Positions 878 through 26,590 of a stretch of 37,785 nt of DNA are shown here, piece by piece. The notes under the pieces were generated by a model, which searched no databases, had not been told where the DNA came from, and saw nothing but the letters and a program-made list of their open reading frames with translations. Origin of the DNA: Octopus bimaculoides (Eukaryota); the NCBI RefSeq assembly GCF_001194135.2, contig NC_068992.1:9152466-9190250 (forward strand), in the 5' to 3' direction. The position numbers and the translations under genes are program-made. Positions within the stretch are counted from its first letter, which is position 1, and the number at the start of each line of letters is the position of its first letter.

Positions 878-1261
878 ATGGCTTTTCGGGGCCTCTTCAG
901 ACATGTCTTAAATCTGAGAAATACTCTTCTTCATCAGAAATGCAGTTCAGTGTGGAGGTTTGGTAACTTCACACGATTAATACACCACAGACCCCTTGTG
1001 GTTTCCATCGCCTCTCAAAGCAGAACTGCTTTAACTCGATGGACACGTCGTTACTGTACCAAAAACATTGTGGCTGATCTGAGGCGTAGGGCAGCTCTGA
1101 GATTTTTGGGCCCAAATTTGGCCTCAAGATTTTCAAATGCACCTCGATTTTCTCGTCCTGGTTACCTTCCTACATTGGCTCTTGTAGGCTTCTCTTTTCT
1201 TAACAGACATCCTTATAACAACAGTCCCCAGCAATTGGGCGAAATTATCTCGGACTTACAG
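878..1261 (+). CDS. PINK1: PINK1 coding exon 1 (mitochondrial targeting sequence and TM-like segment)
   Basis: ATG at 878. Arg-rich, acid-poor N-terminus, then ADLRRRAA and PTLALVGFSF, resembling invertebrate PINK1 N-termini. Donor CAG|GTAAGT after 1261; 384 nt, ends phase 0. Confidence 0.9.
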
Positions 1262-2073
1262 GTAAGTTAAAGTTTTGTTCTTATTTTTATTTATCTATTT
1301 TGGTCCTCCTCACCGTTCAACGGGAGAAAGAGGCCGATAATCTTAATACTAATTATACCGAAAGTGTTAGCGACACTTGTTATTATAGGCTACGAGGCAG
1401 TAAATGTAAATATATTTATATATAAATGGTTATAATAATGGTATAATTTTTTTTTTCAACGTATAAGCAATCAATGAATGACATTGTTTTGGTTTCTGAT
1501 CAAAAACTGGGCGTGTAAAATATTGACACTTTACGACATTGTCAAAGATAGTCATGTCAATTAAGACAACCTCTCCTTTATTATATTTGATTGTTTTTCG
1601 AAAATTCCAATCCCCTCTCACCATGCTTTGTTTTTAATACTTTTCGAATACGTTTTAGGAGGCGATCGGATTTCCTCGTTTAAAATTCTGGAAAAAAAAA
1701 AAAAATTACCAAAATGTTGATGTAGATTGTTTACGATAATTTTGCATTTTCAATCTGCAATCATAAATCGAAAGAATTCTTTTTTAATAACCAAACTAAC
1801 GCTAATGACAAGTTTGCGGGTGAAAACGAAAGATGGGGTCCCCCCCCCCCCAAATTTCATTTATTTTTTTCTTTCCTTACAAAATTACTCCATTTCCGGA
1901 TCAAGATGTAAACATTAACGAAATACTCAGTATTTAGAAAAGGGATGAACTAGCAAACCAAAACCATAACAAGTACAGATTTTCTCGGTTAAATTAACGA
2001 TTTCAAAAAAGAAAAATTATTTTACTGCTGGGTCTCAGCCATAAGCCAGCATGTTTTGGAATATTTACACTTA

Positions 2074-2421
2074 CATCATCATCATCATCGTCGTCGTTTA
2101 ACGTCCTCTTTCCATGCTAGCATGGGTTGGACGATTTGACTGAGGACTGGTGAAACCAGATGGCTACACCAGGCTCCAATCTGATTTGGCAGAGTTTCTA
2201 CAGCTGGATGCCCTTCCTAACGCCAACCACTCAGAGAGTGTAGTGGGTGCTTTTTACGTGCCACCGGCACGAAGGTCAGTCAGGCGGTACTGGCAACAGC
2301 CATGCTCAAAATGGTGTATTTTACGTGCCAACTGCACAGGAGCCAGTTCGGCAGCACTGGCAACGATCTCGTTCAAATGTCTTTACACGTGCCAGGAAGG
2401 CGATGCTGGGCACAGGTGCCG
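2074..2421 (-). mobile_element. SINE-like family A copy 1, (GAT)n tail
   Basis: Homologous to 4281-4762 and 7760-7970; AGGAAGGGCATCC core on the minus strand and (CAT)n at 2074 on the plus strand. Confidence 0.85.
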
Positions 2422-2739
2422 TTGACGGTTTCGCTTTCCCCAAAATAAATTTTCAGAATTTTCCAAATAAAAATGACATTTGCAAAAATTGCATTTAGAA
2501 TTTGAATTCAAAGCATAAAGCCAGAAGAAATGCTGCCAAGCATTTTGTCCAACATGTCAGTGGTTCTGCCAGTCCATTATTTTCCATCAGCTTAATAATA
2601 AAGTAGTTTGGTTTCACACTTGACTGAAGCTCACAGGTAGAGTGTTTTGTTTAGAAAAAAAAAAATATGATGAAATAGATGAAGACTCATGTACTATGTA
2701 CTTTCTGTTACTATTCATTGGTGTCTTTGCTATTTGTAG

Positions 2740-2887
2740 ACATCGTATGAGAAAGAATCCTCTAAACCAGATCCATTGAAAGGAGTGAATGTTCCAAAGA
2801 GCTATTCAAACATTGAATTCTTGAAGTACATTGCTAAAGGGTGTAATGGAGCTGTATTTTCTGCTAAATGTCGTACAGAAGACAACG
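2740..2887 (+). CDS. PINK1: PINK1 coding exon 2 (Gly-rich loop)
   Basis: Acceptor tttgtag|, donor G|GTAAGT. Translates TSYEKE...YIAKGCNGAVFSAKCRTEDN, matching the PINK1 P-loop; 148 nt, phase 0 to 1. Confidence 0.92.
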
Positions 2888-2976
2888 GTAAGTATTTTTA
2901 CAATTGTTATATTATGCTTCTACTACTAAAACTTCTAGTATTTTAAAGTTCCAGTAATGAGACACAACCAACAAAT

Positions 2977-3042
2977 GACTGTTCCGTTGATTGGGTCAAC
3001 TGGAACCCTCGACGTCGTAAGCGACGGAGTGCCAACAACAGC
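2977..3042 (+). mobile_element. SINE 3' fragment
   Basis: gttccgttgattgggtcaactggaaccctcg...gacggagtgcc is homologous to 9778-9830. Confidence 0.6.
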
Positions 3043-3196
3043 AATTTTACTATAGTGTGATACTTCATTTTGAGATAGTATAATACATAATGTCAATTTA
3101 ATATAATTTCTAATGTTACTGTAGTGTAATTACATAATATTGGTTTCATGTAATTCATAATGGTCTTGTACTTTTGTAATTTTTTTTTCTTGACAG

Positions 3197-3253
3197 AAAG
3201 TGATATTTCCAACTTGAGTGAGTCTCGTTTGGATGAGAACCAAAACCAAGATG
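3197..3253 (+). CDS. PINK1: PINK1 coding exon 3 (insert-1 region, 57 nt)
   Basis: Acceptor ttttcttgacag|, donor G|GTAAGG. Open symmetric phase-1 frame ESDISNLSESRLDENQNQD. No homology support because insert 1 is variable. Confidence 0.7.
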
Positions 3254-3591
3254 GTAAGGACAGTCTTTTATACAAGATGTTTTCTTCTTTTCTCCTCTTA
3301 GCACTATGGAACTTTTCCTTATTTTTCTCAGTCCCCATTGATCTTCTTTTCACTTGCACATATACGACTGCATCCACACATACAAACAACTGTTTGTCAA
3401 AATGCCATACATACACTTAGAAAATATAATCACACACACACACACACACAAGTTGCTCTCCTGTCAATGATAATTCCTGTACTATGTGTGTGAGTGTGTG
3501 TGTATATATATGTATATATACAGCACTGTAATTGACTGTATGTACATGTGTATATCACAGTAGCTGAAAATAGAATGTTAAATTGACTCAG

Positions 3592-3690
3592 TTATAAAAA
3601 TCAGTTCCAACCATATTAAATGCAGATGTTTTTCTGAGTGTGGCAGAAAAATTTCTAGAGCAACAAAGAAGAAATGGAATTCTAATGAAG
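3592..3690 (+). CDS. PINK1: Candidate optional PINK1 insert-1 exon (start 3592 or 3661)
   Basis: Strong donor AAG|GTGAGT after 3690. Frame-preserving acceptors give 99 nt (3592) or 30 nt (3661), both open, but their polypyrimidine tracts are weak. Confidence 0.35.
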
Positions 3691-3756
3691 GTGAGTCAGA
3701 AAGTTATACAATTTATATTTGCATAACGTACTGACTCACCTTTATATAAGGTATGC

Positions 3757-3787
<31 letters not shown>

Positions 3788-4014
3788 GTCCAGTAATGAT
3801 TCAGTAATGGCAGTTGGTACTTTCTGTTATCTAGATAATGTAATCAGTGTGAATGTGTGTGTGTGTGTGTAATTTGAGTAAAGATGGTTAAATAAGAGAC
3901 CAACTGGAACATCCAGGCATGCATGAAAATGTACAACTACATACAGAGGCATATATCAACATATTGGGGTTTATTTTTGTTTTTCTTTTTACAATTTATA
4001 TTTTATATTTCTAG

Positions 4015-4171
4015 GTGCTTGTAGCCAAAACAGTCAGGAAAATGAGGAACTTGTCATCAAATGCCTGTTTAATTACTATGTGGAAAGTAATTATAATGAA
4101 CTGATAAAAAAGTTTTGGAATGAAGCTATTCCAAGTCTTCGTATCAGTGGACAAGATGATATATCTGATAG
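4015..4171 (+). CDS. PINK1: PINK1 exon with catalytic Lys and alphaC
   Basis: Acceptor tatttctag|, donor AG|GTAAAA. ELVIKCLFNYYVESNYNELIKKFWNEAIP matches the PINK1 LAIKMMFNY..QSN...E..P segment; phase 1 to 2. Confidence 0.93.
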
Positions 4172-4280
4172 GTAAAAGTTTAATCTTTTAACAATATGTG
4201 TGTGTCTGTAATGTGAAAATCACTTTTTGTCACAGTAACGAGTGTTTTCTAGACTGTTTTCTATTTGTACAATGACCTCT

Positions 4281-4762
4281 TGAGCCATACTCGATGACTG
4301 ACACCTGCGCCAGTGGAGCACTAACAGCACTGTCCGAGCGTGTTCATTGCCAGAGCACCTGTCTGGCTTCCATGCTAGTGGCCGGTAAATTGCACCATTT
4401 GAGCATAATCGTTACCAGCGTCGCCTTCTAGCACCTGTGCTGGTGGCACGTTAGGAAATCATTCGAGCGAGGTCATTGCCAGTGCCGCTGGACTGGCTCC
4501 TGTGCAGGTGGCATGTAAAAAAAACACCCTTTTGAGCATGGCCGTTGTCAGTATCATGTGACTGGCCCTCGTGCTGGTCGCACATAAAAACACCCACTAC
4601 ACTCTCAGAGTGGTTGGTGTTAGGAAGGGCATCCAGCTGTAGAAACTCTGCCAAATCAGATTGGAGCCTGGTGCAGCCTTCTGGCTTGCCAGTCCTCAGT
4701 CAAATCGTCCAACCCATGCTAGTATGGAAAGCAGACGTTAAACGATGATGATGATGATGATG
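4281..4762 (+). mobile_element. SINE-like family A copy 2 with 9-bp target site duplication
   Basis: ATGACCTCT at 4272-4280 and 4763-4771; (GAT)n tail; internal 65-nt modules. Confidence 0.88.
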
Positions 4763-5039
4763 ATGACCTCTGTATCTCTGAACAAACTAGCTGTATACCT
4801 AGTTTACTTGTATGTTATATCTTACATATAAAAATACCTCCTCATATCTGTCCCTCATTTTCATGAAAGAATGATTCATTGATTCTGAAAGAATGGAAGG
4901 CCTAACTGACTGAAGCAGAATTTGAACTTAAAACGTAGGAAATCAAATACTGTGTAGCACTTTACACCAGTGTTCTTTATTTTTTGTCAATCCAAATTCT
5001 CAGTAAGAATAAGGAAGTGAAATAAAATAATCTATTCAA

Positions 5040-5255
5040 CCCCTTAGCTTTCAGATTACTCTGTCAAATGTAATGCTTGTTTATTCTCATTCTTTTGAAT
5101 TGGCCATGGATTACCTTGAAGTTTCGAGACTTCGATGATGTGGCTGCTTATTTTTAGAATGACATTGTAGGGTAAGTGTGAGAGGCTGGATCTGTCCATT
5201 TTTAATATGAAACAGAATATTCGAGCCAGAGAAAGTTAGTTTAAATGCTAAAGGG
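5040..5255. mobile_element. MITE with CCC...GGG ends (piggyBac-type, degenerate TTAA flanks)
   Basis: Left CCCCTTAGC, right GCTAAAGGG; flanks TCAA and ATAG. Confidence 0.55.
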
Positions 5256-5299
5256 ATAGGGAAAATATTTTGACCTGAAATTCTTATTTTATTTTCCAG

Positions 5300-5476
5300 T
5301 GATCTTGTGAAAAGCAGACTACCTCCACATCCCAACATTGTGACCATATACAATGTATTCCATGGGAGTCTTCCTGACTTACCTGAATCTGTTGAGAACT
5401 TTAAATCTGCTTTGCCACAGAATCTGTATCCTGAGAGTTTCGGTCGAAGTATGACATTATGTCTGATAATGAAAAG
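5300..5476 (+). CDS. PINK1: PINK1 exon with insert 3 and hinge
   Basis: Acceptor attttccag|, donor AG|GTATTT. RLPPHPNIV...SALPQNLYPESFGRSMTLCLIMKR matches PINK1-specific insert 3; 177 nt, phase 2 to 2. Confidence 0.95.
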
Positions 5477-5710
5477 GTATTTTCATCATTTGTTTTCTAA
5501 TTAACAATTTGTAATCAAGCAAACAGGATCATTTGTGGTTTGCTCAAATTTTTTATTTGTGACTATTTATTTTCTCAACTTAAGACAGGTAAAAATTGAA
5601 TGATTTACATGTGTTACTGATAACACTTCTTTTTTTTTTTTTTTTAACTTAACTATTTCACATTTTATGTGCTTTTTATAAATCTTTAAGCCTATTATAT
5701 TGTCATTTCA

Positions 5711-5919
5711 CCCTTCTGATACCAAACTGCTTGAAAGTATCTTTGGTTCTTTAATGCAAATTCCCTGTTTTAAAGTGATTTAAATTAAAATTTCATACTA
5801 ATATATATTCTAAACATCAGCTTTATAACGACAAAGTTGTGTTATTAAATTCTTTGTTATTTTCAAAATTAATTGACACAAACACAGTGTATCTTAACAT
5901 AAATATGGTAACAAAAGGG
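5711..5919. mobile_element. MITE with CCC...GGG ends (piggyBac-type)
   Basis: CCCTTCTGATACCA versus TGGTAACAAAAGGG (12/14 inverted match); flanks TTCA and CTAA are each one change from TTAA. Confidence 0.65.
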
Positions 5920-6229
5920 CTAAACATATACAGTGTTTATTTTCCTAAACCTTATTTGAGTTTATTTTATCATAATATTTAGCACAATTTCATCACCACA
6001 ATGAATCACGAGGAAGTATCATTTAACTTACTAAAAATTGTAGCCAAATCTTCCTCAAATTGAAACTCTGAATGCTAAACGGTCAAACTGATGTTTTGCA
6101 GATGTAAATAATAAATATTTTTTGAATTATGTTCTTTCTTTAAAGATGATGTAAATAGTGTAAAAAATAACAATATTATTAACAAGAATCTATCTCAGAT
6201 CTTTTTGTTTTTTCTTCTTGACTCACCAG

Positions 6230-6408
6230 ATATGAGATGACATTGAGTGATTATCTTCAAACCAAGAATCCTTCTATGCGAGTCAGAGTGATGTTGTTTA
6301 CGCAACTCTTGGAAGGTATTCGACACATGATTAAACACCAAGTGGCACACCGTGATCTCAAACCAAATAATATTCTTTTGGAAGATGTTCCATCGGATGA
6401 TTCTTCTG
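6230..6408 (+). CDS. PINK1: PINK1 exon with catalytic loop (HRD)
   Basis: Acceptor ctcaccag|, donor G|GTGAGG. YEMTLSDYL...QLLEGIRHM...VAHRDLKPNNILLE; 179 nt, phase 2 to 1. Confidence 0.95.
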
Positions 6409-6724
6409 GTGAGGGACAAAGAATCTCTTTTATTCAGTTTGGTCTTTTTTTCCCCCATTTTCTAAAATTCTATTTTCGTTGTAACATTTCAGTTGTGAGC
6501 TTTCCTGAAATGCCAGTGTATAAGCAAAATCAAAGCACTTCAAATCAGCTGCAATGAGGTTGCTATAATTGTTTAAAATCTTAGAAAGGTGGTACTCCAG
6601 CATGGCTACAGTCCAATGAATGAAACTAACGAAAGACTGATTTCAGTTGGATTATTTTCTCTTTGTCTCTGTGAATAGAAAAAAAAAAAGCGATTTATTT
6701 TCTTCTTTTTAATTTTGTTTTTAG

Positions 6725-6843
6725 ATGCTTGTCCTCATCTTGTTATCTCGGATTTTGGTTGTTGTTTTGCTGGAAAATCTTCTGGAATGATGGTACCATA
6801 CGATTGTGCAAAGGATGGGAATGCTGCGTTCCAGGCTCCAGAG
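6725..6843 (+). CDS. PINK1: PINK1 exon with DFG to APE activation segment
   Basis: Acceptor ttttgtttttag|, donor GAG|[20 protein letters not shown]...GNAAFQAPE; DFGCC is PINK1-typical; 119 nt, phase 1 to 0. Confidence 0.95.
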
Positions 6844-6869
6844 GTTTGTTATCTCACATTTTGAATATG

Positions 6870-7090
6870 GTGTGACTGTGTGATAAAAAGTTTGCTTCCC
6901 AGTAAAAGAATTAAACAAGTAAAAGAACAAAAGAATATGTGTGTGTGTGTGACTTTTTATTTTGACATCACTTGATTGTTGTGAATGAATGCCACCATCG
7001 TGCATGTAGCATCCTTCATTCTCAATCTTCCATGAAAACACATCTGATTATGGGGAAAATATTACCTTGGAAACAAATGAGGATTGTAGA
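6870..7090 (+). mobile_element. Degraded compound SINE (family B head, (TG)n, 3' module)
   Basis: tgtgactgtgtgataaaaagtttgcttccc head, and a 3' part similar to 21050-21190. Confidence 0.5.
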
Positions 7091-7235
7091 AAATGCACTT
7101 CAACAAAATTTCCTCCAACTCAGGCAAACACGGAAAAGTGGACTTAAAAACAATAATATATATTTTACCCAATACCTATCAGAGGCTACTCTGTGTTAAA
7201 AGTAACAGTGCATTTATGATCTCTTCTTTTAAAAG

Positions 7236-7371
7236 GTATCTCATGCGAAATCTCATGAACTGATTGATTGTTCTAAAGTTGATCTTTGGGCAGCCGGAAT
7301 CTTGGCATTTGAAATCTTTGGCATTAAGGATTTGTTTGATGTGAGAACAAAAGAAAGGAAAGAATTTCCTG
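7236..7371 (+). CDS. PINK1: PINK1 exon with alphaF
   Basis: Acceptor ttcttttaaaag|, donor G|GTAAGT. LIDCSKVDLWAAGILAFEIFG matches PINK1 IDYSKADAWAVG.IAYEIFG; 136 nt, phase 0 to 1. Confidence 0.92.
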
Positions 7372-7505
7372 GTAAGTGTCTGAATTTTAAATTCTATTTA
7401 GTATTTTTGAAGTGAAAGCCTTTTTTTCTGTTTTTTTTTTTTCTATTTCACAATCCAAGCTGCCAAAAACGTCTGTCAGTTGAAACTAATCAGCAACACT
7501 ACCAT

Positions 7506-7603
7506 NNNNNNNNNNNNNNNNNNNNNNNNNNNNNNNNNNNNNNNNNNNNNNNNNNNNNNNNNNNNNNNNNNNNNNNNNNNNNNNNNNNNNNNNNNNNNNN
7601 NNN
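7506..7603. other. Assembly gap
   Basis: N run. Confidence 1.
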
Positions 7604-7654
7604 TCATCTTCACTATCATCACCATAGTTGTTGTTTTTACTACTTTCAACATAG

Positions 7655-8035
7655 GTTCAGGTATAGCTGTGTAGTTAAAAAGTTTGCTTTGTAACCACAT
7701 AGTTTTGGGTTCAGTCTCATTGTGTGACACTTAGGGCAAGTGCCTTGTATTCCAGCTCTCATCATCATCATCATCATTGTTTAACGTCCGCTTTCCATGC
7801 TAGCATGGGTTGGACGATTTGACTGAGGACTGGCGAACCAGATGGCTACACCAGGCTCCAATCTGATTTGGCAGAGTTTCTACAGCTGGATGCCCTTCCT
7901 AACGCCAACCACTCAGAGAGTGTAGTGGGTGCTTATACGTGCCACCGGCACAAAGGCCAGTCAGGCGGTACCAGCTCTGTGTGCATAAAAGACTTGTGAG
8001 AGACTCTGTTGGACAGAAGCTGAATATATATATAT
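7655..8035 (+). mobile_element. Degraded CORE-type tRNA SINE (family B) interrupted by family A copy 3
   Basis: Head gtatagctgtgtagttaaaaagtttgc and core gacacttagggcaagtg match 36896-37010; sequence resumes after the 7971-7978 duplication. Confidence 0.7.
7760..7970 (-). mobile_element. SINE-like family A copy 3, 5'-truncated, 8-bp target site duplication
   Basis: CCAGCTCT at 7752-7759 and 7971-7978; near-identical to the 3' part of copy 1. Confidence 0.88.
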
Positions 8036-8044
8036 ACACATATG

Positions 8045-8262
8045 CAGAGCTGTTTACTCATGAGACAAAATGCTTGGTGGCGTTTTTTCTGGCTCTTTAC
8101 ATTCAAAGTCCAAATACCACCAAAGGTCAACTTTATCTTTCATCCCTTTTGGGTCAATAAATCTTAGTTAAGTACTAGGTTTTCAGTGTAATCAATTTGC
8201 CCCTTACCTTCAAAATTGCTGGCCTTGTGCCAACATTAGAAGGGCTTGTACATAAGCATGCA
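8045..8262 (+). mobile_element. Degraded family C SINE
   Basis: ggtcaactttatctttcatcccttttgggtcaataaa is homologous to the core of 14321-14548. Confidence 0.6.
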
Positions 8263-8487
8263 GTTCAAAGTTTTCTTGCAGTGACCTATGCAGAAAACAT
8301 CTTAACTCCCAACCACTGCCATTACCTCAATGAAAGAACCTCTATGCAGTTGTCCCTTGACTTACCTCTATACATAATGGCCAAATTCCCTCACCACAAC
8401 CTTCCACCATCCCTCTGCCACTGCCCCCATCATTTACCTTTATTGGTGCCGTTTAATAATTGTTTCTTCTCTTTGGTCTCTTCATAG

Positions 8488-8549
8488 ATTTCATCCCACC
8501 TGTGATACAAAGAGTGATTGATGGCCTGATGATCAAAGACCCTGCTCAG
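8488..8549 (+). CDS. PINK1: PINK1 exon with alphaH
   Basis: Acceptor ctcttcatag|, donor CAG|GTAGAT. DFIPPVIQRVIDGLMIKDPAQ; 62 nt, phase 1 to 0. Confidence 0.88.
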
Positions 8550-9149
8550 GTAGATATAATCGATTACCTTATTAGTCACCTATTCATCTGTTGATATGCA
8601 GTTGTGTTCCTGTTTCTTTGTCATGGCTTAAGTTAGAAGAGGAAGTTGACCTTCCAGAACTTTTTGTAAGGATTCCCATGTTGATAGGAAACTATTATCC
8701 TCAGCTTAGGGGTCCTGACCATAATGCTTGTAACCCCACATTTAACTCAATGACAGGCTTCTCGTTTTTTTATAAAGTTCTTAATACAGATTTTATGAAG
8801 GGTTTTGACACTGGTATAACTGAGAATGGGAGAAGGGATAAAGAAATCTGGTTAGTCAAATAAGTGTTGTTGGCAGCTGATAGCAAATTCAGAAGAGCGG
8901 AGATCAGTTTGGCAACAGTATAAAAAAACGAAAGAAAATAGACATTGGACCATGTAGAGTGTTGTTGTCTAAAAGTTGTCAGATTTAATCTTTGCTGTTT
9001 GCATCTGGGGCTGCAACTGAAGCCTGAATGGGTTAAGAGGTTTATTTCACTGTCACGAGGTCCTGATTTCAATTTTAGTGCACAGCACTGGTCAAGTGTC
9101 TTCTACCATAACTCAAAACTTTGTGGGTGACATTGGCTAAATGGAAATC

Positions 9150-9468
9150 ATAATTGTCATTTGCAAATGAATATCAGTTGGTAGCCTGTACCATGCCTTC
9201 CCTAAGATTTTTAGGTGCCTATATGACTGTAAGCAGACATAGACACACTCTTGGTTCTCTCAGCCCTGACCCAGGGAGCATCCAGGATGTGACAGCTGGA
9301 GAGAGAAAGAGACAGTGTAACACCAGCATTTGGTTGTTAATCCCTTTCAGCAGAGTTGAATGGAGCAACATAAAATGAAGCGCATTTACACTAGACACTA
9401 CCTGTTCCAGGAATTGAACCAATGACTGTATAATCGCAAACCCAATACCTTAGTCACTAGGGCACATG
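9150..9468 (-). mobile_element. Degraded tRNA-derived SINE
   Basis: Minus-strand B-box-like ggttcaattcc near 9410-9420 and an A-box-like head near 9467. Confidence 0.45.
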
Positions 9469-9564
9469 TCAGTCAGCCTCTCTGCTTTGCTTTCTGAAAC
9501 TGGATTAAATTAATGTATCACTTAAAGCTTGCAAATTTAGATAAGTTTGTATGGAGGAGACAAA

Positions 9565-9830
9565 AAAAGATTATGAGTTCGATTCCTGGTAGTGCATTGT
9601 GTCATTGAACAAGACACTGTTTTTCATTGCTCCAGTTCACTCAGCTGGCAAAAAAATGAGTTGTACCCGTAATTGAGAGGGTGAGCATAGTCACATTGAC
9701 TCTCCTAAAGAACTGTGTTAAGGGTGCATGTGTCTGTGGAGTGCTCAGCCACTTGCATGTTAATTTCATGAACAGGTTGTTCCATTCATTGGATCAACTG
9801 GAACACTTGTTGTAACCAACGGAGAGCCAG
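9565..9830 (+). mobile_element. Degraded tRNA-derived SINE
   Basis: B-box gagttcgattcc, then tgtgtcattgaacaagacact; 3' end homologous to 2977-3042. Confidence 0.6.
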
Positions 9831-10216
9831 GCCAGGCCAGGATTCTTGTCTCTCTATGGAATACAGGCTTTATCCAGATTTTCAGACTCCACTAAATAAT
9901 GTTTGTTGTTGCAGATGACCACTGCTTCCTTAGACTTTAGTTTCTATAGAATACATTTATGAATGCTTTTGAACAGTGTTCAGCAAGTGTTAATCTCTGG
10001 ACAGGATGAGATCACAATAATCCCAAGATGAAGCAATTTCACTTCACTAATCCGGTTAAAGCTCTTGTGAAAGCCATGAATGTTGCAGTATTCCATTATC
10101 TTAGCAAATTTGTCCTTTGAACCGAGTGAAAAGAAGAAGAAAATTTATATCTAGGAATGTTCTGATGACTGTTACTTTGTTGACTCTGAATAGTTATTCA
10201 ATTTTCTGAATTTCAG

Positions 10217-10507
10217 CGTCTTGATGCCATCACCGCCTGCAATATATTAAACATCTATCTTTGGAACTCGTCCTGTGATATGAAGCAGCAGCCGAAATCT
10301 TTTTTACAACAATTGGCAAAAAGTGATGAACCAAAGAGTTCTCCAGTTATCACCTTAAAGGAAAACTTTGTGAAACATCTCAACATCAAACTCTTATTTG
10401 ATGCGATATCTTTTGCTTATCCCAACTTCATGTATCCTGTAGATCTGAGGGAAGTTGCACAACAGTTTCCAAATTATAACAGAGAAACACTTATTGTGTC
10501 AGATTAA
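10217..10507 (+). CDS. PINK1: PINK1 last coding exon (alphaI and C-terminal extension)
   Basis: Acceptor aatttcag|. RLDAITACNILNIYLW resembles RPSARVAANVLHLSLW; TAA ends at 10507. The ten exons sum to 1710 nt (569 aa plus stop). Confidence 0.9.
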   Translation, partial: RLDAITACNILNIYLWNSSCDMKQQPKSFLQQLAKSDEPKSSPVITLKENFVKHLNIKLLFDAISFAYPNFMYPVDLREVAQQFPNYNRETLIVSD

Positions 10508-13524: not shown

Positions 13525-14283
13525 NNNNNNNNNNNNNNNNNNNNNNNNNNNNNNNNNNNNNNNNNNNNNNNNNNNNNNNNNNNNNNNNNNNNNNNNNNNN
13601 NNNNNNNNNNNNNNNNNNNNNNNNNNNNNNNNNNNNNNNNNNNNNNNNNNNNNNNNNNNNNNNNNNNNNNNNNNNNNNNNNNNNNNNNNNNNNNNNNNNN
13701 NNNNNNNNNNNNNNNNNNNNNNNNNNNNNNNNNNNNNNNNNNNNNNNNNNNNNNNNNNNNNNNNNNNNNNNNNNNNNNNNNNNNNNNNNNNNNNNNNNNN
13801 NNNNNNNNNNNNNNNNNNNNNNNNNNNNNNNNNNNNNNNNNNNNNNNNNNNNNNNNNNNNNNNNNNNNNNNNNNNNNNNNNNNNNNNNNNNNNNNNNNNN
13901 NNNNNNNNNNNNNNNNNNNNNNNNNNNNNNNNNNNNNNNNNNNNNNNNNNNNNNNNNNNNNNNNNNNNNNNNNNNNNNNNNNNNNNNNNNNNNNNNNNNN
14001 NNNNNNNNNNNNNNNNNNNNNNNNNNNNNNNNNNNNNNNNNNNNNNNNNNNNNNNNNNNNNNNNNNNNNNNNNNNNNNNNNNNNNNNNNNNNNNNNNNNN
14101 NNNNNNNNNNNNNNNNNNNNNNNNNNNNNNNNNNNNNNNNNNNNNNNNNNNNNNNNNNNNNNNNNNNNNNNNNNNNNNNNNNNNNNNNNNNNNNNNNNNN
14201 NNNNNNNNNNNNNNNNNNNNNNNNNNNNNNNNNNNNNNNNNNNNNNNNNNNNNNNNNNNNNNNNNNNNNNNNNNNNNNNNNNN
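13525..14283. other. Assembly gap
   Basis: N run. Confidence 1.
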
Positions 14284-16234: not shown

Positions 16235-16787
16235 NNNNNNNNNNNNNNNNNNNNNNNNNNNNNNNNNNNNNNNNNNNNNNNNNNNNNNNNNNNNNNNNNN
16301 NNNNNNNNNNNNNNNNNNNNNNNNNNNNNNNNNNNNNNNNNNNNNNNNNNNNNNNNNNNNNNNNNNNNNNNNNNNNNNNNNNNNNNNNNNNNNNNNNNNN
16401 NNNNNNNNNNNNNNNNNNNNNNNNNNNNNNNNNNNNNNNNNNNNNNNNNNNNNNNNNNNNNNNNNNNNNNNNNNNNNNNNNNNNNNNNNNNNNNNNNNNN
16501 NNNNNNNNNNNNNNNNNNNNNNNNNNNNNNNNNNNNNNNNNNNNNNNNNNNNNNNNNNNNNNNNNNNNNNNNNNNNNNNNNNNNNNNNNNNNNNNNNNNN
16601 NNNNNNNNNNNNNNNNNNNNNNNNNNNNNNNNNNNNNNNNNNNNNNNNNNNNNNNNNNNNNNNNNNNNNNNNNNNNNNNNNNNNNNNNNNNNNNNNNNNN
16701 NNNNNNNNNNNNNNNNNNNNNNNNNNNNNNNNNNNNNNNNNNNNNNNNNNNNNNNNNNNNNNNNNNNNNNNNNNNNNNNNNNNNNNN
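16235..16787. other. Assembly gap
   Basis: N run. Confidence 1.
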
Positions 16788-17035: not shown

Positions 17036-17207
17036 CCTCTGAAGAAGCCGAAGAAGATTTCCCAGATGACAACATTCCAGATGAAGTTCTTGTGGAGCAT
17101 TCTGAAAAGCCATTATCTGCTGCTATGAGAGCTAGGATTGAACGCAACCGACAGAGAGCACTGATGCTTAGACAAGCACGACTGAACAGTAAACCCTACT
17201 CAAAACC
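17036..17207 (+). CDS. XPA: XPA exon 2 (N-terminal basic region)
   Basis: Acceptor cattttag|, donor CC|GTTAGT. LSAAMRARIERNRQRALMLRQARL matches the XPA N-terminus; phase 1 to 2. Confidence 0.93.
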
Positions 17208-17216
17208 GTTAGTAAT

Positions 17217-17245
17217 AATTATCATTATTATCATTATTATTATTA

Positions 17246-17288
<43 letters not shown>

Positions 17289-17295
17289 CATTATT
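17217..17295. repeat. (ATT)n microsatellite
   Basis: Direct reading. Confidence 0.95.
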
Positions 17296-17742
17296 GAGTG
17301 AGAGAGCAGTGCATGCCATCAAAGTGACACTGGGGTAAAATATACGAAGCCCAATATACCCATCATGACTACCCGTCTGATAAGGGTACACCAGGCACAT
17401 GCATCACAACCATATGTGTGCAACATGGTGATCTCATATCAAGATAAACAGCGCATGACCTCGCAGGTGGGGCCCAGTTAGAATGGTCCTTGAATAAGGG
17501 TTGTTTAAGGACGTTGAATGAAACATCCATATTTCCAGAGGTGAATTATTCAAACCCTAAAGAATTCCTCTCAACACATGGCTATGATGCTCCCCCACTA
17601 CTTCTGTTCGTGATCAGAGATGCACATATCGTCAGCCACCAAGGGACATGCTCAACTGGTTAAGGTCAAACAACTGACAAGCAAATCTGCGGTATTGAGC
17701 AGAATATTTGCTGTAGCTCATCTTTTATACCAAGGCAAAACA
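17296..17742 (-). mobile_element. About 447-bp non-coding interspersed element between two (TAA)n arrays
   Basis: Complex sequence bounded sharply by ATT arrays on both sides; no ORF or Pol III boxes seen. Orientation is inferred from the assumed TAA tail. Confidence 0.55.

Positions 17743-17797
<55 letters not shown>
17743..17797. repeat. (ATT)n microsatellite, tail of the adjacent non-LTR fragment
   Basis: Direct reading. Confidence 0.95.
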
Positions 17798-17802
<5 letters not shown>

Positions 17803-18400
17803 GGTTTTGTTGTAACTCCTGGAGTCTTTCATGTGTAGTGGGTTTACCACCTGCAGCCAATGGTAACCATATTATCTGATACTTTCCTTATTATTCTGAC
17901 TGTGCCAAGGAGGCAAACTTTTTGTAACAACCCTACTGGGCACTCTATTCTGATTTTCTTTATATTCCTCTTGGTGCCTCTTGATACTGTCCCCAAGGAC
18001 CCACCAATAATTGGGACTGTCTTCACCTTCTTCATTTTCTGGGCTATTTTGTACTTAAAAGGATTGTACATGTCTATATTTTTGCCTTCCTTCTTGACTA
18101 TTTGTTGGTCAAAGGGGCATGCAACATCAACTATATAGCATGTGATGCACCTTGCTGCATTACCCCTTGGCCTGATATAGCACCTGATCTGTTTGGATTT
18201 GGTAGTCTCACAGGATTTTGCAGGTCTCCAACTCCACCCCTCTGCAGTTTGTGCTCATGCCACATCTTGCCTCTCTCTAGACCCCATCCCCTTTCCACAC
18301 AGTTTTCAATAAAGTACTTTCGCTACCTCATCATGTCACCACAACTTACAGTTGGTTTTGGCCAAGTGTAGGGCATTCATTCATGATATGAGCCGTAGTT
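17798..18400 (-). mobile_element. Decayed 5'-truncated R4/Dong-like non-LTR retrotransposon (REL domain)
   Basis: Frameshifted translation HIMNECPTLGQ / HDEVAKVLY* / KIL*DYQIQTD / YIVDVACPFD...VPIIGGSLGTV...LLQKVCLLGTVRIIRKV, then a short 3' UTR and (TAA)n. Confidence 0.8.
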
Positions 18401-18445
18401 TCGTCAACTCTCTTATAGATTTGTACCATTTTTACCATATTACAG

Positions 18446-18561
18446 CAATGGCCAGAGTATAATGAAGGTTTGCCGCAGTGAAATCGATACAGGAGCAGGA
18501 TTTTTCTTAGATGAAGACCAAGAAAAAGATCTGAAGAACCAAAAAGTAATTTATGAAGAAG
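18446..18561 (+). CDS. XPA: XPA exon 3 (ERCC1-binding motif)
   Basis: Acceptor catattacag|, donor G|GTAAAG. IDTGAGFFLDE versus human IDTGGGFILE; phase 2 to 1. Confidence 0.93.
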
Positions 18562-18629
18562 GTAAAGACCAAACCGTAGTGGAATGGTTTTACTGTGTGT
18601 TTATCTATTTGTTTTCCAATTCTCTACTC

Positions 18630-18870
18630 ATACATGTGTCACACTGTCCTCTTCCAACCCTTCTCCCCACGTGTGTCACTCTGTTCTCTTCCTGTCCCCT
18701 TCATACATGTGTCAACCTGTCATCTTTCTGTCTCTTATGTTACCCTCTTCTCTTCCTATCTCCTTTCCCACATGTGTCACCCTGTCCACTTCCTGTCTCC
18801 TTCTTGCACGTGTCAGTCTACATGTGCATCCCTGTCCTCTTTTATCTCCTTCCCACATGTGTCATTCCAA
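18630..18870. repeat. Pyrimidine-rich degenerate minisatellite, about 35-nt unit
   Basis: Recurrent cacatgtgtcaccctgtcctcttcc-like units, about 7-8 copies. Confidence 0.7.
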
Positions 18871-19244
18871 TCCCCACACTAAACCGAGACAAGGGGCTCA
18901 AATCTTTCCAATAAAGGGAGACCACTCTTCTCTCAGCTATAAACCCAGACGACCACTTCTCAGTCATTTCTCGTTGTTTTGCTTTTATTAAGGATCACCT
19001 TTACTTTTCTCAACTACTTCCGTACAGTTTCTGTCAATGAAGTTTCACAATAACAATGTTTTGGATTATTGTAACTGATTTGGTAAACTTGATGGATTTC
19101 ATTCTGTTATACATTCTGTTATACATTCTGTTATACATTACATCACATGCAACTGAGCACTGCATATCAGAGAGTGATATTAATATAGTATAACATATCA
19201 CATCGTATTGCATAGCTGACCGATTGATTTGCTGCAGGATAACT

Positions 19245-19495
19245 AAGCTACATGGTAGAGATACCAGACCAGACAACATGGTGTAGGATATTAGACTACA
19301 CGACGTACGATATTTGACTACATGGTGTAAGATACCAGACCACATGGTGTAAGATATCTGACTACATGGTGTAGGCTATCACACCACTTGGTGTAGGATA
19401 CCTACCCTCATGGTTTAAAATATCAAACCACAGGTATTGGATATCAGACCAGTTGTTGTAGGATACTAGGATATCACATGATGTAGGATAACCTA
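19245..19495. repeat. 22-nt minisatellite
   Basis: About 11 degenerate copies of gactacatggtgtaagatacca; a 12-nt x3 repeat (cattctgttata) lies just upstream at about 19100-19137. Confidence 0.8.
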
Positions 19496-19528
19496 TTGAT
19501 TGAAATAAACCATTTCTATTCCTTGCAG

Positions 19529-19634
19529 CTCCTTCTTTGCTAATTGATTCCTGTAACTGTGAAAATTGTGACCAAAAGTTTACAGAGTCTTATTTGCTGA
19601 AGAACTTTGAATGTTTTGTCTGTGATTCTTGCCG
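19529..19634 (+). CDS. XPA: XPA exon 4 (C4 zinc finger)
   Basis: Acceptor ccttgcag|, donor CG|GTGAGA. CENC-x17-CDSC; phase 1 to 2. Confidence 0.95.
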
Positions 19635-20097
19635 GTGAGATTTATTTTATTTGCTAAGAGGCTAGTCATTGATTTGGTGAGAATGACAAGAGAGCATTTA
19701 TAATTCAACGTAAACTAACTTAACATGGATGATAATTTATAAATTTTACTCTAAAAATGGATTTATCAGCTTTAACAATGAATTGATAAAAAAAGTAATA
19801 AAGCGAAAGTTGTAAATTTACTTTATACATTGTAAGTTAATGATTTCACTGTGTTTGATAAAATCTCATTTTCTTTTAATAACCATTACAAGTTTTATCA
19901 TATATCATATGATATATCGTACAGGTAAAATTTAGTTTGCTAATTATGTTACCTCACTACCCCCCGCCACTGCTATTAAAGCTTAATGTCCCTTTCAACA
20001 TGCCCAGTGTTCCTTTGGGGGCAGTACTGTCCACATTGAGAACCTTCGGTCCATATAAATACATGTTTTCGCGACAATTATGTTTATAATTATTCAG

Positions 20098-20266
20098 GGA
20101 AGAAAACAACGAAAAATACAACCTAATTACTAAAACGGATGCAAAGACGAAATATTTACTTAACGATGTTGATCTGGACAAACGAGAACCGAAGCTGAAA
20201 TTCATTGTAAGAAAGAACCCACACAACCCGAGATGGGGTGACATGAAATTATATTTAGAGTCTCAG
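20098..20266 (+). CDS. XPA: XPA exon 5 (DNA-binding domain)
   Basis: Acceptor attattcag|, donor CAG|[51 protein letters not shown]; phase 2 to 0. Confidence 0.96.
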
Positions 20267-20499
20267 GTAAGAAGCACATGATGTTATCCCTCCCCTTCCC
20301 CTATAAAAGGACCACCCCACTCCTCATCTCATTCCCCTCAGACATTTCTGTCGTTTCCATCAATTCTCAATCCATGGCTTTTAGCCTCTGTAATTGCAAT
20401 TCCTCTGCAACCTCCATAATTCCCTCACCTGCCATTTCTTACTTTCTCTCATTACAACAGCAAACGGGAGGTTCTTCTATGCTGTTAATTGATTTACTA

Positions 20500-20675
20500 G
20501 AAATAGCAGTCGTTTGTCAATCATACCAAGCCTAGTGGCTATGTGGCAAAAGAGACCGATAGAATAAGTACTAGGCATCCAAAGAATAAGTCCTGGGGTC
20601 GATTTTCTCGACTAAAGGTGGTGCTCCAGCATGGCCGCAGTCAAATTACTGAAACAAGTAAAAGAGTAAAAGAGA
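20500..20675 (+). mobile_element. SINE 3' part
   Basis: agtactaggc...aaagaataagtcctggggtcgat...gctccagcatggccgcagtcaaa is shared with 31731-31910. Confidence 0.75.
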
Positions 20676-20715
20676 GAAAAGTATATGATTTCACAATGGT
20701 TTTTGTTTCTTACAG

Positions 20716-20833
20716 GTGAAGCGTCGAGCCATTGATGTCTGGGAATCAGAAGAAAAGATTGAAGCAGCCAAAGAAGCTAAAACAGAGAAAAGAGTAAACA
20801 TGAAGAAGAAAAAGTTTAACAAGAAAATGAAAG
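20716..20833 (+). CDS. XPA: XPA exon 6 (long helix)
   Basis: Acceptor tttcttacag|, donor G|GTTGTA. VKRRAIDVWESEEKIE...KKKKFNKKMK; phase 0 to 1. Confidence 0.93.
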
Positions 20834-26124: not shown

Positions 26125-26590
26125 TATAAGTGAAATTTTAACGTAATGAAACAAAATGGAAATGTTAGTTAAATTATTAAAATCTTAACTATGGAACAAA
26201 ATTTAAGACATAATCAAAATTTTAACTTACAACAAGTTCAAGTGATATGTTTTGAAACACCTTAACTATTGAAAGAAATTTAAAATATAATCGAAATTTT
26301 AATGTAAAGAAACAAGTTGAAGTGTTACACTCTTAAAAGCTTTCATGATGCAGCGAAATTTAAGACATAATACAAATCTTAACGTAATAAAACAAGTCTA
26401 AGCGTTATGATCTTAAAATCTTCAATTATGGAACAAAATTTAAGACATAATTGAAATTCTAACATAATGAAACAAGCTCATAATCAATATGTTTAATACA
26501 ATTAAATAAGGTCAGGTGTTACACTCTTACAAACCTAAACTATGGAGCAAAATTTAAGATGTAATCATAATCTTAACATGAAGAAACAAT
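26125..26590. repeat. AT-rich minisatellite, about 80-nt unit
   Basis: Anchor atttaa(g/a)a(c/t)ataat at 26201, 26278, 26358, 26438 and 26552. Confidence 0.8.

What the first reader, a model, noticed from the sequence alone, without database searches (positions are those of the whole stretch)
6230..6843. PINK1 with a non-canonical catalytic loop and a shortened activation segment
Seen: HRDLKPNN, and [31 protein letters not shown] (31 aa from DFG to APE). Known: human and insect PINK1 have HRDLKSDN, and the human segment is 34 aa with S401/S402, RGGN (407-410) and LMAPE. Here S365/D366 become P/N, the S402 region is deleted or replaced, G408 is D and M414 is Q. The catalytic Lys, alphaC Glu, HRD, DFG, the S228-equivalent (VES-N) and insert 3 are retained. 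Inference: an active but rewired kinase with altered ubiquitin/Parkin recognition or activation, or a fast-evolving paralog.
Basis: partly seen in the sequence, partly recalled or inferred. Interest (0 to 1): 0.7.

Follow-up and report, generated by a model that had tools for sequence, protein, structure and literature searches.

The report
Divergent octopus PINK1 kinase exons
These are exons 6 and 7 of the octopus PINK1 gene; the odd catalytic-loop and activation-segment residues are real, are largely shared by octopus, squid and cuttlefish PINK1 and are kept by selection, so this is a divergent but apparently working ortholog, not a broken or duplicated gene.

Summary
Window 6230-6843 is exon 6, intron 6 and exon 7 of the 10-exon Octopus bimaculoides PINK1 gene (XP_014780946.1). 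It encodes HRDLKPNN and a 31-residue DFG..APE segment.

It is a single-copy ortholog, not a paralog or an artefact. O. sinensis and Argonauta have the same exon structure, and RNA-derived squid/cuttlefish contigs carry related changes.

D366N, G408D/E, L413F/H, M414Q/R and loss of D406 are shared by all coleoids sampled. So are changes outside the flagged region: Ins3 R302 and G307, Y444F, N451/P452. The 3-residue T-loop deletion is octopod-specific, and S365P is Octopus-specific. Gastropods and bivalves are canonical.

dN/dS is 0.05-0.2, so the derived state is under purifying selection. All catalytic residues, the S228 equivalent, Ins3 and the C-terminal extension are kept.

An even sample of PINK1 diversity tempers the claim. 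Only 54% of clusters have a 34-residue segment. Pro365 (3%), Asn366 (11%) and non-Gly408 (8%) occur elsewhere. HRDLKPNN is the mainstream kinase loop (identical in CDK7).

Cephalopods are still among the most divergent ~5-7% of PINK1s. Most likely this is an active ubiquitin/Parkin kinase with a re-wired substrate groove, but that is not tested. Interest is modest.

The parts
878..10507 (+). Complete PINK1 coding region. Ten exons: 878-1261, 2740-2887, 3197-3253, 4015-4171, 5300-5476, 6230-6408, 6725-6843, 7236-7371, 8488-8549, 10217-10507 (stop included). Protein of 569 aa.
   Evidence: An exact spliced mapping reproduces XP_014780946.1 residue for residue. All introns are GT..AG. phmmer against PDB gives PINK1 at E=7.5e-61, versus 2e-8 for the best other kinase.
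6230..6408 (+). Exon 6: alphaD-alphaE, catalytic loop and beta7 (YEMTLSDYL...HRDLKPNNILLEDVPSDDSS).
   Evidence: The exon is the same 179 nt in O. sinensis and Argonauta.
6348..6371 (+). Catalytic loop HRDLKPNN (H348-N355). Pro353 is CCA at 6363-6365 (human S365). Asn354 is AAT at 6366-6368 (human D366).
   Evidence: Octopus has P, Argonauta L, decapodiforms S at position 365, and all have N at 366. CDK7 has an identical loop.
6409..6724 (+). Intron 6 (316 nt, GTGAGG..TTTTAG).
   Evidence: There is no alternative exon encoding a canonical segment anywhere in the window (tblastn).
6725..6843 (+). Exon 7: beta8 plus the whole activation segment.
   Evidence: The exon is 119 nt in both Octopus species and 125 nt in Argonauta.
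6751..6843 (+). Activation segment [31 protein letters not shown] (D377-E407, 31 aa). The 3-residue gap relative to canonical PINK1 lies between D394 (6802-6804) and K397 (6811-6813). D398 is GAT at 6814-6816 (human G408). F403 and Q404 are at 6829-6834 (human L413 and M414).
5403..5450 (+). Ins3 (the ubiquitin-binding loop) in exon 5. It carries cephalopod-wide replacements K284 (human P296), N290 (R302) and S295 (G307), plus the octopod-specific S299. G297 (human G309) and R298 are retained.
   Evidence: R302, G307 and G309 are named as key conserved Ins3 residues in bioRxiv 10.1101/2023.03.31.534916.
4053..4124 (+). N-lobe catalytic elements in exon 4: V210-I-K212 (human A217-I-K219), S221 (the S228 autophosphorylation site equivalent) and E233 (alphaC Glu, human E240).
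7269..7334 (+). Exon 8 positions changed in cephalopods: C419 (human Y431, octopods only), F432 (human Y444, TcPINK1 Y429), D439 and L440 (human N451 and P452).
   Evidence: Tc Y429 holds the Asn that contacts ubiquitin (PMC6039469).

Best explanation
The region is exons 6-7 of the single-copy PINK1 ortholog of Octopus bimaculoides.

The unusual residues are genuine genomic states that arose in three layers:
1. In the coleoid stem: D366N, loss of the Asp before K/R407, G408D/E, L413F/H, M414Q/R. Outside this region: A217V, M237F, Ins3 P296/R302/G307, Y444F, N451/P452.
2. In octopods: a 3-residue deletion in the T-loop between PY and K, D391G, an Ins3 Asn->Ser change, Y431C.
3. In Octopus: S365P.

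Purifying selection has held these states since. [quoted passage not shown]

Inference: it is an active Ser/Thr kinase that is still activated by trans-autophosphorylation and still phosphorylates Ser65 of ubiquitin and the Parkin Ubl. It would do so through a substrate groove (Ins3, P+1 loop, alphaF Tyr) whose contacts have been re-made. One possibility is that the acidic residue at position 408 takes over part of the role of the lost Asp406.

Shown: identity, orthology, clade distribution, selective constraint, retained catalytic residues and a confident PINK1 fold.
Inferred: catalytic activity, retained ubiquitin specificity and any compensation.
For: Identity:
- 100% match to XP_014780946.1.
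- PDB best hits are all PINK1.
- The AF2 model has pLDDT above 90 in the kinase core and 83-95 across the activation segment. Its 24 best Foldseek hits are all PINK1, including ubiquitin-bound 6EQI at TM 0.82.

Not an artefact:
- O. sinensis carries identical motifs and Argonauta related ones in independent genome assemblies, both with the same 10 exons.
- Four RNA-derived decapodiform contigs carry HRDLKSNN and ..GKEGN..HRAPE.

Clade pattern:
- Gastropods (Nucella, Batillaria, Pomacea, Elysia) and bivalves (Pinctada, Mytilus) have canonical 34-residue ..GGN..LM[AP]PE segments.
- 18 of 76 columns that are at least 93% conserved in 249 other PINK1s are replaced in all 7 cephalopods.

Constraint:
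- NG86 dN/dS is 0.05-0.21 in the kinase core, 0.06-0.11 in exons 6-7 and 0.07-0.25 in DFG..APE.

Catalytic residues:
- K212, E233, D350, N355, D377, E407, S221 and C163 lie in invariant or nearly invariant columns.

Tolerance of individual changes:
- The loop is identical to CDK7.
- Tc D341 (= D366) only H-bonds a Mg-bound water (PMC6039469).
- The S402 equivalent is dispensable in TcPINK1 (PMC5679756).
- Ala at 411 and at 412 increases ubiquitin phosphorylation in human PINK1 (PMC10262784; bioRxiv 2023.03.31.534916).
- Pro365, Asn366, non-Gly408, Arg414 and Phe444 all occur in other PINK1 lineages.
Against: - No activity data exist for any cephalopod PINK1.
- Several replaced residues matter experimentally in insect or human PINK1. 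Tc D381A and D381R (= human D406, which contacts Ub His68 and the HRD Arg) reduce activity significantly (D381A) or drastically (D381R). Tc Y429A abolishes it, although Phe was not tested. R302 and G307 are called key Ins3 residues.
- The back half of the T-loop (P399..N410) is 12 residues in 135/146 PINK1 clusters but 9 in octopods.
- Gln at 414 was seen nowhere else.
- The proposed 406-to-408 'acid shift' has no statistical support (Fisher p=1.0).
- Whether cephalopods keep Parkin, or whether its Ubl has co-evolved, was not examined.
Confidence: 0.6

Rival explanations
1. Changed specificity. Coleoid PINK1 is an active kinase that has lost or strongly weakened ubiquitin Ser65 phosphorylation. 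It would now act mainly on another substrate, such as a co-evolved Parkin Ubl or non-ubiquitin targets, or it would bind ubiquitin in a different pose.
For: - Replacements cluster in the three elements that hold ubiquitin: Ins3 (P296, R302, G307), the P+1 loop (G408, L413, M414) and the alphaF Tyr that positions N410.
- Tc D381 and Y429 mutants lose ubiquitin kinase activity.
- Cephalopods rank 6th, 8th and 10th of 147 PINK1 representatives in deviation at family-conserved columns.
- The relative-rate test gives about 86 versus 45 unique changes against other molluscs (p about 1e-3 to 1e-4).
Against: - Ubiquitin is essentially invariant in animals (established knowledge), and N410, G409, G309, C166 and S228 equivalents that touch or organise the ubiquitin site are retained.
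- Each change has precedents in other PINK1 lineages.
- Strong purifying selection fits retention of the ancestral, essential function as well as it fits a new one.
Confidence: 0.22
2. Restorative RNA editing. A-to-I recoding in cephalopod mRNA converts some derived codons back to canonical residues: AAT 6366 N->D (D366), GAT 6815 D->G (G408), AGT 5436 S->G (G307). The protein made would then be more canonical than the genome suggests.
For: - All three codons are one A-to-G step from the canonical residue.
- Coleoids recode extensively (PMC8382921).
- An inverted SINE-like pair (4559-4763 and 7759-7963, 92% complementary) brackets exons 5-8 and could form dsRNA.
Against: - Four RNA-derived decapodiform contigs from separate runs read AGC, AAY and GAR at these codons, so there is no majority editing there.
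- Pro365, Phe413, Gln414 and the 3-residue deletion cannot be reversed by A-to-I.
- One-step distance is what ordinary G-to-A transitions produce.
- No PINK1 entry was found in the supplementary files that could be searched.
Confidence: 0.05
3. Fast-evolving paralog: a duplicated PINK1 freed from constraint, with a canonical copy elsewhere in the genome.
For: High divergence from other mollusc PINK1s.
Against: - There is only one PINK1 per species among the hits for O. bimaculoides, O. sinensis and Argonauta.
- A search with a canonical mollusc profile listed Pomacea, Mytilus, Dreissena and Elysia but no cephalopod protein.
- The same derived states are shared across a split of roughly 270 million years or more (established knowledge), as expected of an ortholog.
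- dN/dS is 0.05-0.2.
Confidence: 0.03
4. Decaying gene or pseudokinase, or a mis-assembled or mis-annotated locus.
For: There is an assembly gap in intron 8 (7506-7603). The Acanthosepion genome models P0007 and P0008 lack the activation-segment exons.
Against: - The ORF is intact across 10 exons with consensus splice sites.
- Three assemblies and four transcriptomes agree.
- All catalytic residues are present.
- Purifying selection is seen.
- The fold is confidently predicted.
Confidence: 0.02

Closest known systems
Insect and human PINK1 (PhPINK1 6EQI/7T4K, TcPINK1 5OAT/5YJ9/7MP8, human 9EIH)
   Same: - Same fold (Foldseek TM 0.71-0.82) and best sequence matches (E about 1e-61).
- Same catalytic residues, the DFGCC motif and the P-loop Cys.
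- S228-type site in YVES-N, Ins3 of the same length, G309, G409-N410 and APE.
- N-terminal targeting/TM-like segment and a helical C-terminal extension.
   Different: - HRDLKPNN instead of HRDLKSDN.
- 31 instead of 34 residues from DFG to APE, through a 3-residue loss that removes the S401/S402 region.
- D391G, D406A, G408D, L413F, M414Q.
- Ins3 P296K, R302N, G307S.
- A217V, M237F, Y431C, Y444F, N451D, P452L.
Decapodiform cephalopod PINK1 (RNA-derived contigs P0003-P0006; Acanthosepion pharaonis)
   Same: Shares D366N, loss of D406, an acidic residue at 408 (Glu), non-Leu/Met at 413/414 (His-Arg), Y444F, G307S, A217V, M237F and changes at N451/P452.
   Different: Keeps Ser365 and the full-length back half of the T-loop. 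It instead lacks 2 residues in the front half (32 aa). It has a very long acidic Ins1, giving proteins of about 740 aa.
Other short-loop or variant PINK1 lineages (unnamed 50%-identity cluster representatives)
   Same: - Segments of 30-33 residues are common (52 of 142, counting the two cephalopod representatives).
- HRDLKPDN or HRDLKPEN occurs in 5 clusters, xNN in 16, RQGN/RDGN/KEGN in about 10, and ..LRAPE in 7.
- The annelid Owenia has IAKEGN.
   Different: Their length changes lie between DFG and P399. The P399..N410 stretch is 12 residues in 135/146. None combines as many changes, and none has Gln414.
CDK7 and the generic Ser/Thr kinase catalytic loop (HRDLKPxN)
   Same: The octopus loop HRDLKPNN is letter for letter the CDK7 loop and one residue from the CDPK/AMPK loop HRDLKPEN.
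   Different: There is no relationship beyond the kinase superfamily. This only shows that the 'non-canonical' loop is compatible with full activity.

Membership tests
PINK1 (PTEN-induced kinase 1) | Eukaryotic protein kinase domain with a complete catalytic set: beta3 Lys, alphaC Glu, HRD Asp, catalytic-loop Asn, DFG Asp, APE Glu. | tested here: met
   K212, E233, D350, N355, D377 and E407 lie in invariant columns. Pfam Pkinase E=3.2e-20.
PINK1 (PTEN-induced kinase 1) | Closest sequence and fold relatives are PINK1 proteins, well separated from other kinases. | tested here: met
   PDB phmmer gives PINK1 at 7.5e-61 against 2.3e-8 for the next kinase. In Foldseek the top 24 hits are PINK1 at 1e-31 to 1e-24, and the next family is at 8e-14. 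RefSeq names it Pink1.
PINK1 (PTEN-induced kinase 1) | N-lobe autophosphorylation site equivalent to human Ser228 (Ph S202, Tc S205). | tested here: met
   S221 in YYVESNY. The column is invariant in A1 and A2 and is Ser in 123/142 representatives. Phosphorylation itself cannot be tested here.
PINK1 (PTEN-induced kinase 1) | Insertion 3 (substrate-binding loop) with conserved R302, G307 and G309. | tested here: inconclusive
   The loop is present with no indel, and G309 and the following Arg are kept. R302 is Asn and G307 is Ser in octopus, and both are replaced in all cephalopods.
PINK1 (PTEN-induced kinase 1) | C-terminal helical extension packed on the C-lobe, and an N-terminal helix (NTE). 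| tested here: met
   The AF2 model has helices at 117-134 and at 457-566 with pLDDT mostly 84-97. The Foldseek alignments cover 420-470 columns of insect PINK1 cytosolic domains.
PINK1 (PTEN-induced kinase 1) | N-terminal mitochondrial targeting sequence followed by a hydrophobic (TM) segment. | tested here: inconclusive
   The basic N-terminus MAFRGLFRHVLNLRN... and the hydrophobic LPTLALVGFSFL align to the consensus LPT.AF.GLS. No targeting predictor was available.
PINK1 (PTEN-induced kinase 1) | Activation segment of the human/insect type: 34 residues, D-[KR]-G-G-N, L-M-[APS]-P-E. | tested here: not met
   Octopus has 31 residues, AKDGN and FQAPE. This is a majority trait, not a defining one: only 76/142 cluster representatives have 34 residues, and D406 is Asp in only 66/146.
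PINK1 (PTEN-induced kinase 1) | Phosphorylates Ser65 of ubiquitin and of the Parkin Ubl. | not testable with these tools
   Needs an enzyme assay. Complex modelling was not possible because only single window-derived or retrieved proteins can be submitted for structure prediction.

The most novel reading that the evidence does not exclude
In the coleoid cephalopod stem lineage PINK1 re-made its substrate groove: Ins3 R302/G307, the P+1 loop at 408/413/414, the alphaF Tyr, and in octopods a shortened T-loop. As a result it either binds ubiquitin in a pose different from 6EQI or has shifted its main substrate. That would make it a natural, selection-tested alternative solution to ubiquitin Ser65 recognition.
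Probability: 0.2. Interest if true: 0.65.

Novelty: new member of a known kind. Interest (0 to 1): 0.3.

Why it matters

Coleoid PINK1 is a natural mutagenesis series held by selection. It replaces residues that are reported as essential or key in insect and human enzymes (Tc D381, Tc Y429, human R302 and G307). It also carries Ala at positions 411 and 412, which raise activity in human PINK1.

If it is a normal ubiquitin kinase, it shows which contacts are dispensable or can be compensated, which helps in interpreting human variants at these positions. If it is not, it points to a lineage-specific change in mitochondrial quality control.

Either way the result cautions against calling positions 'invariant' from insect- and vertebrate-rich alignments. 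An even sample of the family shows much more freedom, for example in segment length, D406 and S365.

Tried and rejected
1. Alternative or mutually exclusive exon restoring canonical motifs. tblastn of canonical mollusc exon 6 and 7 peptides against the whole window found only the annotated exons.
2. Second PINK1 copy. None appeared among the hits to the octopus query or to a canonical mollusc profile. A whole-genome tblastn was not possible.
3. Nautilus or other basal cephalopod PINK1, to date the change. None could be identified. The representative library has no names.
4. RNA-editing tables. The Liscovitch-Brauer 2017 paper was not found under the PMC id tried, recalled from memory. The supplements of PMC8382921 and PMC9068888 have no PINK1 entry.
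5. Schubert 2017 (the 6EQI paper) was not found under the PMC id tried, recalled from memory. Contacts were taken from Okatsu 2018 instead.
6. 'Acid shift' covariation between positions 406 and 408 across PINK1 clusters was not significant (Fisher p=1.0).
7. My first 'invariance' surveys were insect-heavy and overstated how exceptional the length and the D406 change are. The balanced set corrected this. In some searches, three decapodiform duplicates (P0122-P0124) were wrongly counted as non-cephalopods. This was fixed.
8. The Rfam scan of the window found nothing.
9. The literature searches that could have covered cephalopod PINK1/Parkin found nothing relevant.

Full report
WHAT IS THERE

The window is Octopus bimaculoides genomic DNA. 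On the + strand I built a 10-exon gene by hand: 878-1261, 2740-2887, 3197-3253, 4015-4171, 5300-5476, 6230-6408, 6725-6843, 7236-7371, 8488-8549, 10217-10507. All introns are GT..AG. Its 569-aa translation is identical to RefSeq XP_014780946.1, 'serine/threonine-protein kinase Pink1, mitochondrial'.

The finding's coordinates are exactly the exon 6 acceptor (6230) and the exon 7 donor (6843).
- Exon 6 encodes HRDLKPNN at 6348-6371.
- Exon 7 encodes [31 protein letters not shown] at 6751-6843, 31 residues.
- Both motifs lie inside exons, so splice-site choice cannot alter them.
- No alternative exon with a canonical segment exists in the window.

IS IT PINK1, AND THE ORTHOLOG?

- Against PDB sequences the protein hits PINK1 at E=7.5e-61, and the next kinase family at 2e-8.
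- An AlphaFold2 model built with an 82-sequence alignment has pTM 0.74, pLDDT above 90 in the kinase core and 83-95 across residues 371-410.
- Its 24 best Foldseek hits are all PINK1 structures, with ubiquitin-bound 6EQI second at TM 0.82.
- O. sinensis (P0121, 94% identical) and Argonauta hians (P0002, 68%) have one PINK1 each, with the same 10 exons.
- Neither the octopus query nor a canonical mollusc profile recovered a second cephalopod PINK1. The profile search did list Pomacea, Mytilus, Dreissena and Elysia.

The paralog reading is therefore not supported. A whole-genome tblastn remains to be done.

WHO SHARES THE CHANGES?

The aligned cephalopod segments are:

| Lineage | Catalytic loop | Activation segment | Length |
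|---|---|---|---|
| Octopus (2 species) | HRDLKPNN | ...[10 protein letters not shown][AV]FQAPE | 31 |
| Argonauta | HRDLKLNN | ...PYH---WAKDGNGLFQAPE | 33 (2-residue insertion further upstream) |
| Four decapodiform RNA-derived contigs | HRDLKSNN | DFGCCL--EDT..IPY[QF]IDGYGKEGN[VI]EHRAPE | 32 |

This sorts the changes into three levels:
- Coleoid-wide: D366N, loss of Asp406, an acidic residue at 408, non-Leu/Met at 413/414.
- Octopod-specific: the 3-residue T-loop loss, D391G.
- Octopus-specific: S365P.

Gastropods (Nucella, Batillaria, Pomacea, Elysia) and bivalves (Pinctada, Mytilus) keep 34 residues with GGN and LM[AP]PE. Pinctada alone has HRDLKSNN.

This is a clade trait of coleoids, not of molluscs, and not a peculiarity of this gene copy.

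THE DIVERGENCE IS NOT CONFINED TO THESE EXONS

Among 249 non-cephalopod PINK1s, 76 alignment columns are at least 93% conserved. Eighteen of them are replaced in all seven cephalopod sequences. In human numbering these are A217V, M220C/Y, M221L, M237F, P296K/R/E, R302N/H/D, G307S, D366N, L396M/-, G408D/E, L413F/H, M414Q/R, Y444F, N451D/H, P452L/H, L461 deleted, Y466 and L471.

I recalled the human fragment from memory and used it only as a ruler. It is 88-92% identical to mammalian PINK1s in the database and reproduces the known residue numbers.

Tajima relative-rate tests give about 86 octopus-specific versus about 45 gastropod- or bivalve-specific changes (p about 1e-3 to 1e-4).

FUNCTIONAL MEANING OF THE CHANGED POSITIONS (FROM PAPERS)

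- Tc D381 (= human D406) salt-bridges the HRD Arg and an alphaC Arg as a phospho-mimic. D381A significantly lowers ubiquitin phosphorylation (PMC5679756).
- The equivalent Ph D379 contacts Ub His68, and D381R is nearly dead.
- Tc N385 (= N410, retained in octopus) contacts the Ub Val66 backbone and is held by Tc Y429 (= Y444, which is Phe in all cephalopods). Y429A is nearly dead (PMC6039469).
- Tc D341 (= D366) H-bonds a Mg-bound water, a role Asn can fill.
- The P+1 loop, with C412 facing Ub Glu64, determines substrate fit, and C412A is more active (bioRxiv 10.1101/2023.03.31.534916).
- G411A is hyperactive (PMC10262784). Octopus has Ala at both 411 and 412.
- R302, G307 and G309 are described as key conserved Ins3 residues, and Ins3 as intolerant of indels. 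Cephalopods keep the loop length and G309 but replace R302 and G307.
- The S402 equivalent is dispensable in TcPINK1.

SELECTION

Pairwise Nei-Gojobori dN/dS was computed among three octopods and four decapodiforms. The CDSs were extracted from the loci and each translates exactly to the database protein.

| Region | dN/dS |
|---|---|
| Kinase core | 0.05-0.21 |
| Exons 6-7 | 0.06-0.11 for the informative pairs |
| DFG..APE alone | 0.07-0.25 |

The derived sequence is being conserved, which excludes decay.

HOW EXCEPTIONAL IS IT REALLY?

My first surveys were dominated by insects and suggested near-invariance: 34 residues in 243/248 and LM[APS]PE in 248/248. A profile search of one representative per 50%-identity cluster gives a more even sample and a different picture.

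- Segment length is 34 in only 76/142 (30 in 24, 32 in 16, 31 in 7, 35 in 7).
- Position 365 is S 87, T 24, A 15, P 5, C 4, L 4, N 3.
- Position 366 is Asn in 16/146.
- Position 406 is Asp in only 66/146.
- Position 408 is not Gly in 11 (Q, D, E, V).
- Position 414 is Arg in 7 and never Gln.
- Position 444 is Phe in 5.

The catalytic-loop peptide matches generic Ser/Thr kinases best and is identical to the CDK7 loop. 'Non-canonical' therefore holds only relative to human and insect PINK1.

Two features remain unusual:
- Family-wide length variation sits between DFG and P399. The P399..N410 stretch is 12 residues in 135/146 clusters but 9 in octopods.
- At 58 family-conserved columns cephalopods deviate at 24-28%, against a median of 5% and a 90th percentile of 15%. 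They rank 6th, 8th and 10th of 147, and several of the higher ranks are fragments.

RNA EDITING

Three derived codons are one A-to-G step from the canonical residue: AAT 6366-6368 (N to D), GAT 6814-6816 (D to G) and AGT 5436-5438 (S to G).

The RNA-derived decapodiform contigs nevertheless read AAY, GAR and AGC at these sites. Majority restorative editing is therefore excluded for decapodiforms. It is untested for octopus. Pro365, Phe413, Gln414 and the deletion cannot be edited back in any case.

CONCLUSION

This is a real, clade-wide, selectively maintained divergence of the single PINK1 ortholog. It is most likely an active kinase that still serves the ubiquitin/Parkin pathway through re-made contacts (about 0.6). 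A genuine shift in substrate recognition is the main rival (about 0.2).

I tested one specific compensation idea, that the acidic residue moved from 406 to 408. It has no statistical support.

No paper found in the searchable literature mentions cephalopod PINK1. A 2026 preprint on PINK1 evolution does not discuss cephalopods or evolutionary divergence of the activation segment.

Interest is modest. The result is useful as a natural structure-function series, but it lies within the range of variation the family shows once it is sampled evenly.

Noticed in passing
window ~17040-20830, + strand: The next gene downstream is an XPA (nucleotide-excision repair) homolog. Exon fragments encode ..RARIERNRQRALMLRQARL.., EIDTGAGFFLDEDQE.. 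and KRRAIDVWESEEKIEAAKE..KKKKFNKKMK. The concatenated fragments hit human XPA in the PDB at E=7.5e-19. The full gene model was not built.
   Followed up: partly
window 2076-2254 (+), 4559-4763 (-), 7759-7963 (+): Three copies of a SINE-like interspersed repeat lie in PINK1 introns 1, 4 and 8. The copies in introns 4 and 8 are inverted, 92% complementary over 205 nt, and bracket exons 5-8. Such a pair could form pre-mRNA dsRNA, which would be an ADAR substrate or could promote back-splicing. There was no Rfam match.
   Followed up: no
window exons 7+8 (6725-6843, 7236-7371); proteins P0007/P0008: The genome-based Acanthosepion pharaonis PINK1 models jump from ..TTDNS straight to DTVPIII.., omitting the activation-segment and alphaF exons. 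The transcript contig P0004 from the same species group contains them. In octopus, exons 7+8 total 255 nt, so skipping both would stay in frame and give a kinase-dead isoform. Whether this is an annotation error or a real isoform is unknown.
   Followed up: no
window 7506-7603, 13525-14283, 16235-16787, 27961-28923, 30855-31540, 34564-35238: There are six assembly gaps (N runs, 3734 N in all). The first lies inside PINK1 intron 8. The region 27-35 kb is AT/CA microsatellite-rich low complexity, with a roughly 80-nt tandem unit at 26218-26589.
   Followed up: no
protein P0125 (Owenia fusiformis, annelid): Owenia PINK1 reads ..NIAKEGNPALMAPE. It has the same Asp406 loss and acidic residue at 408 as cephalopods, but a normal 34-residue segment and LMAPE. 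It also deviates at 19 of 100 conserved columns, the highest among non-cephalopods in the first survey.
   Followed up: partly
proteins P0003-P0006 (decapodiform PINK1): Squid and cuttlefish PINK1 carries a very long acidic, Ser/Glu/Asp-rich Ins1 of about 200 residues between the P-loop strands and beta3, giving proteins of about 740 aa. The same insert is only about 30 residues in octopods, encoded by exon 3 plus the start of exon 4.
   Followed up: no
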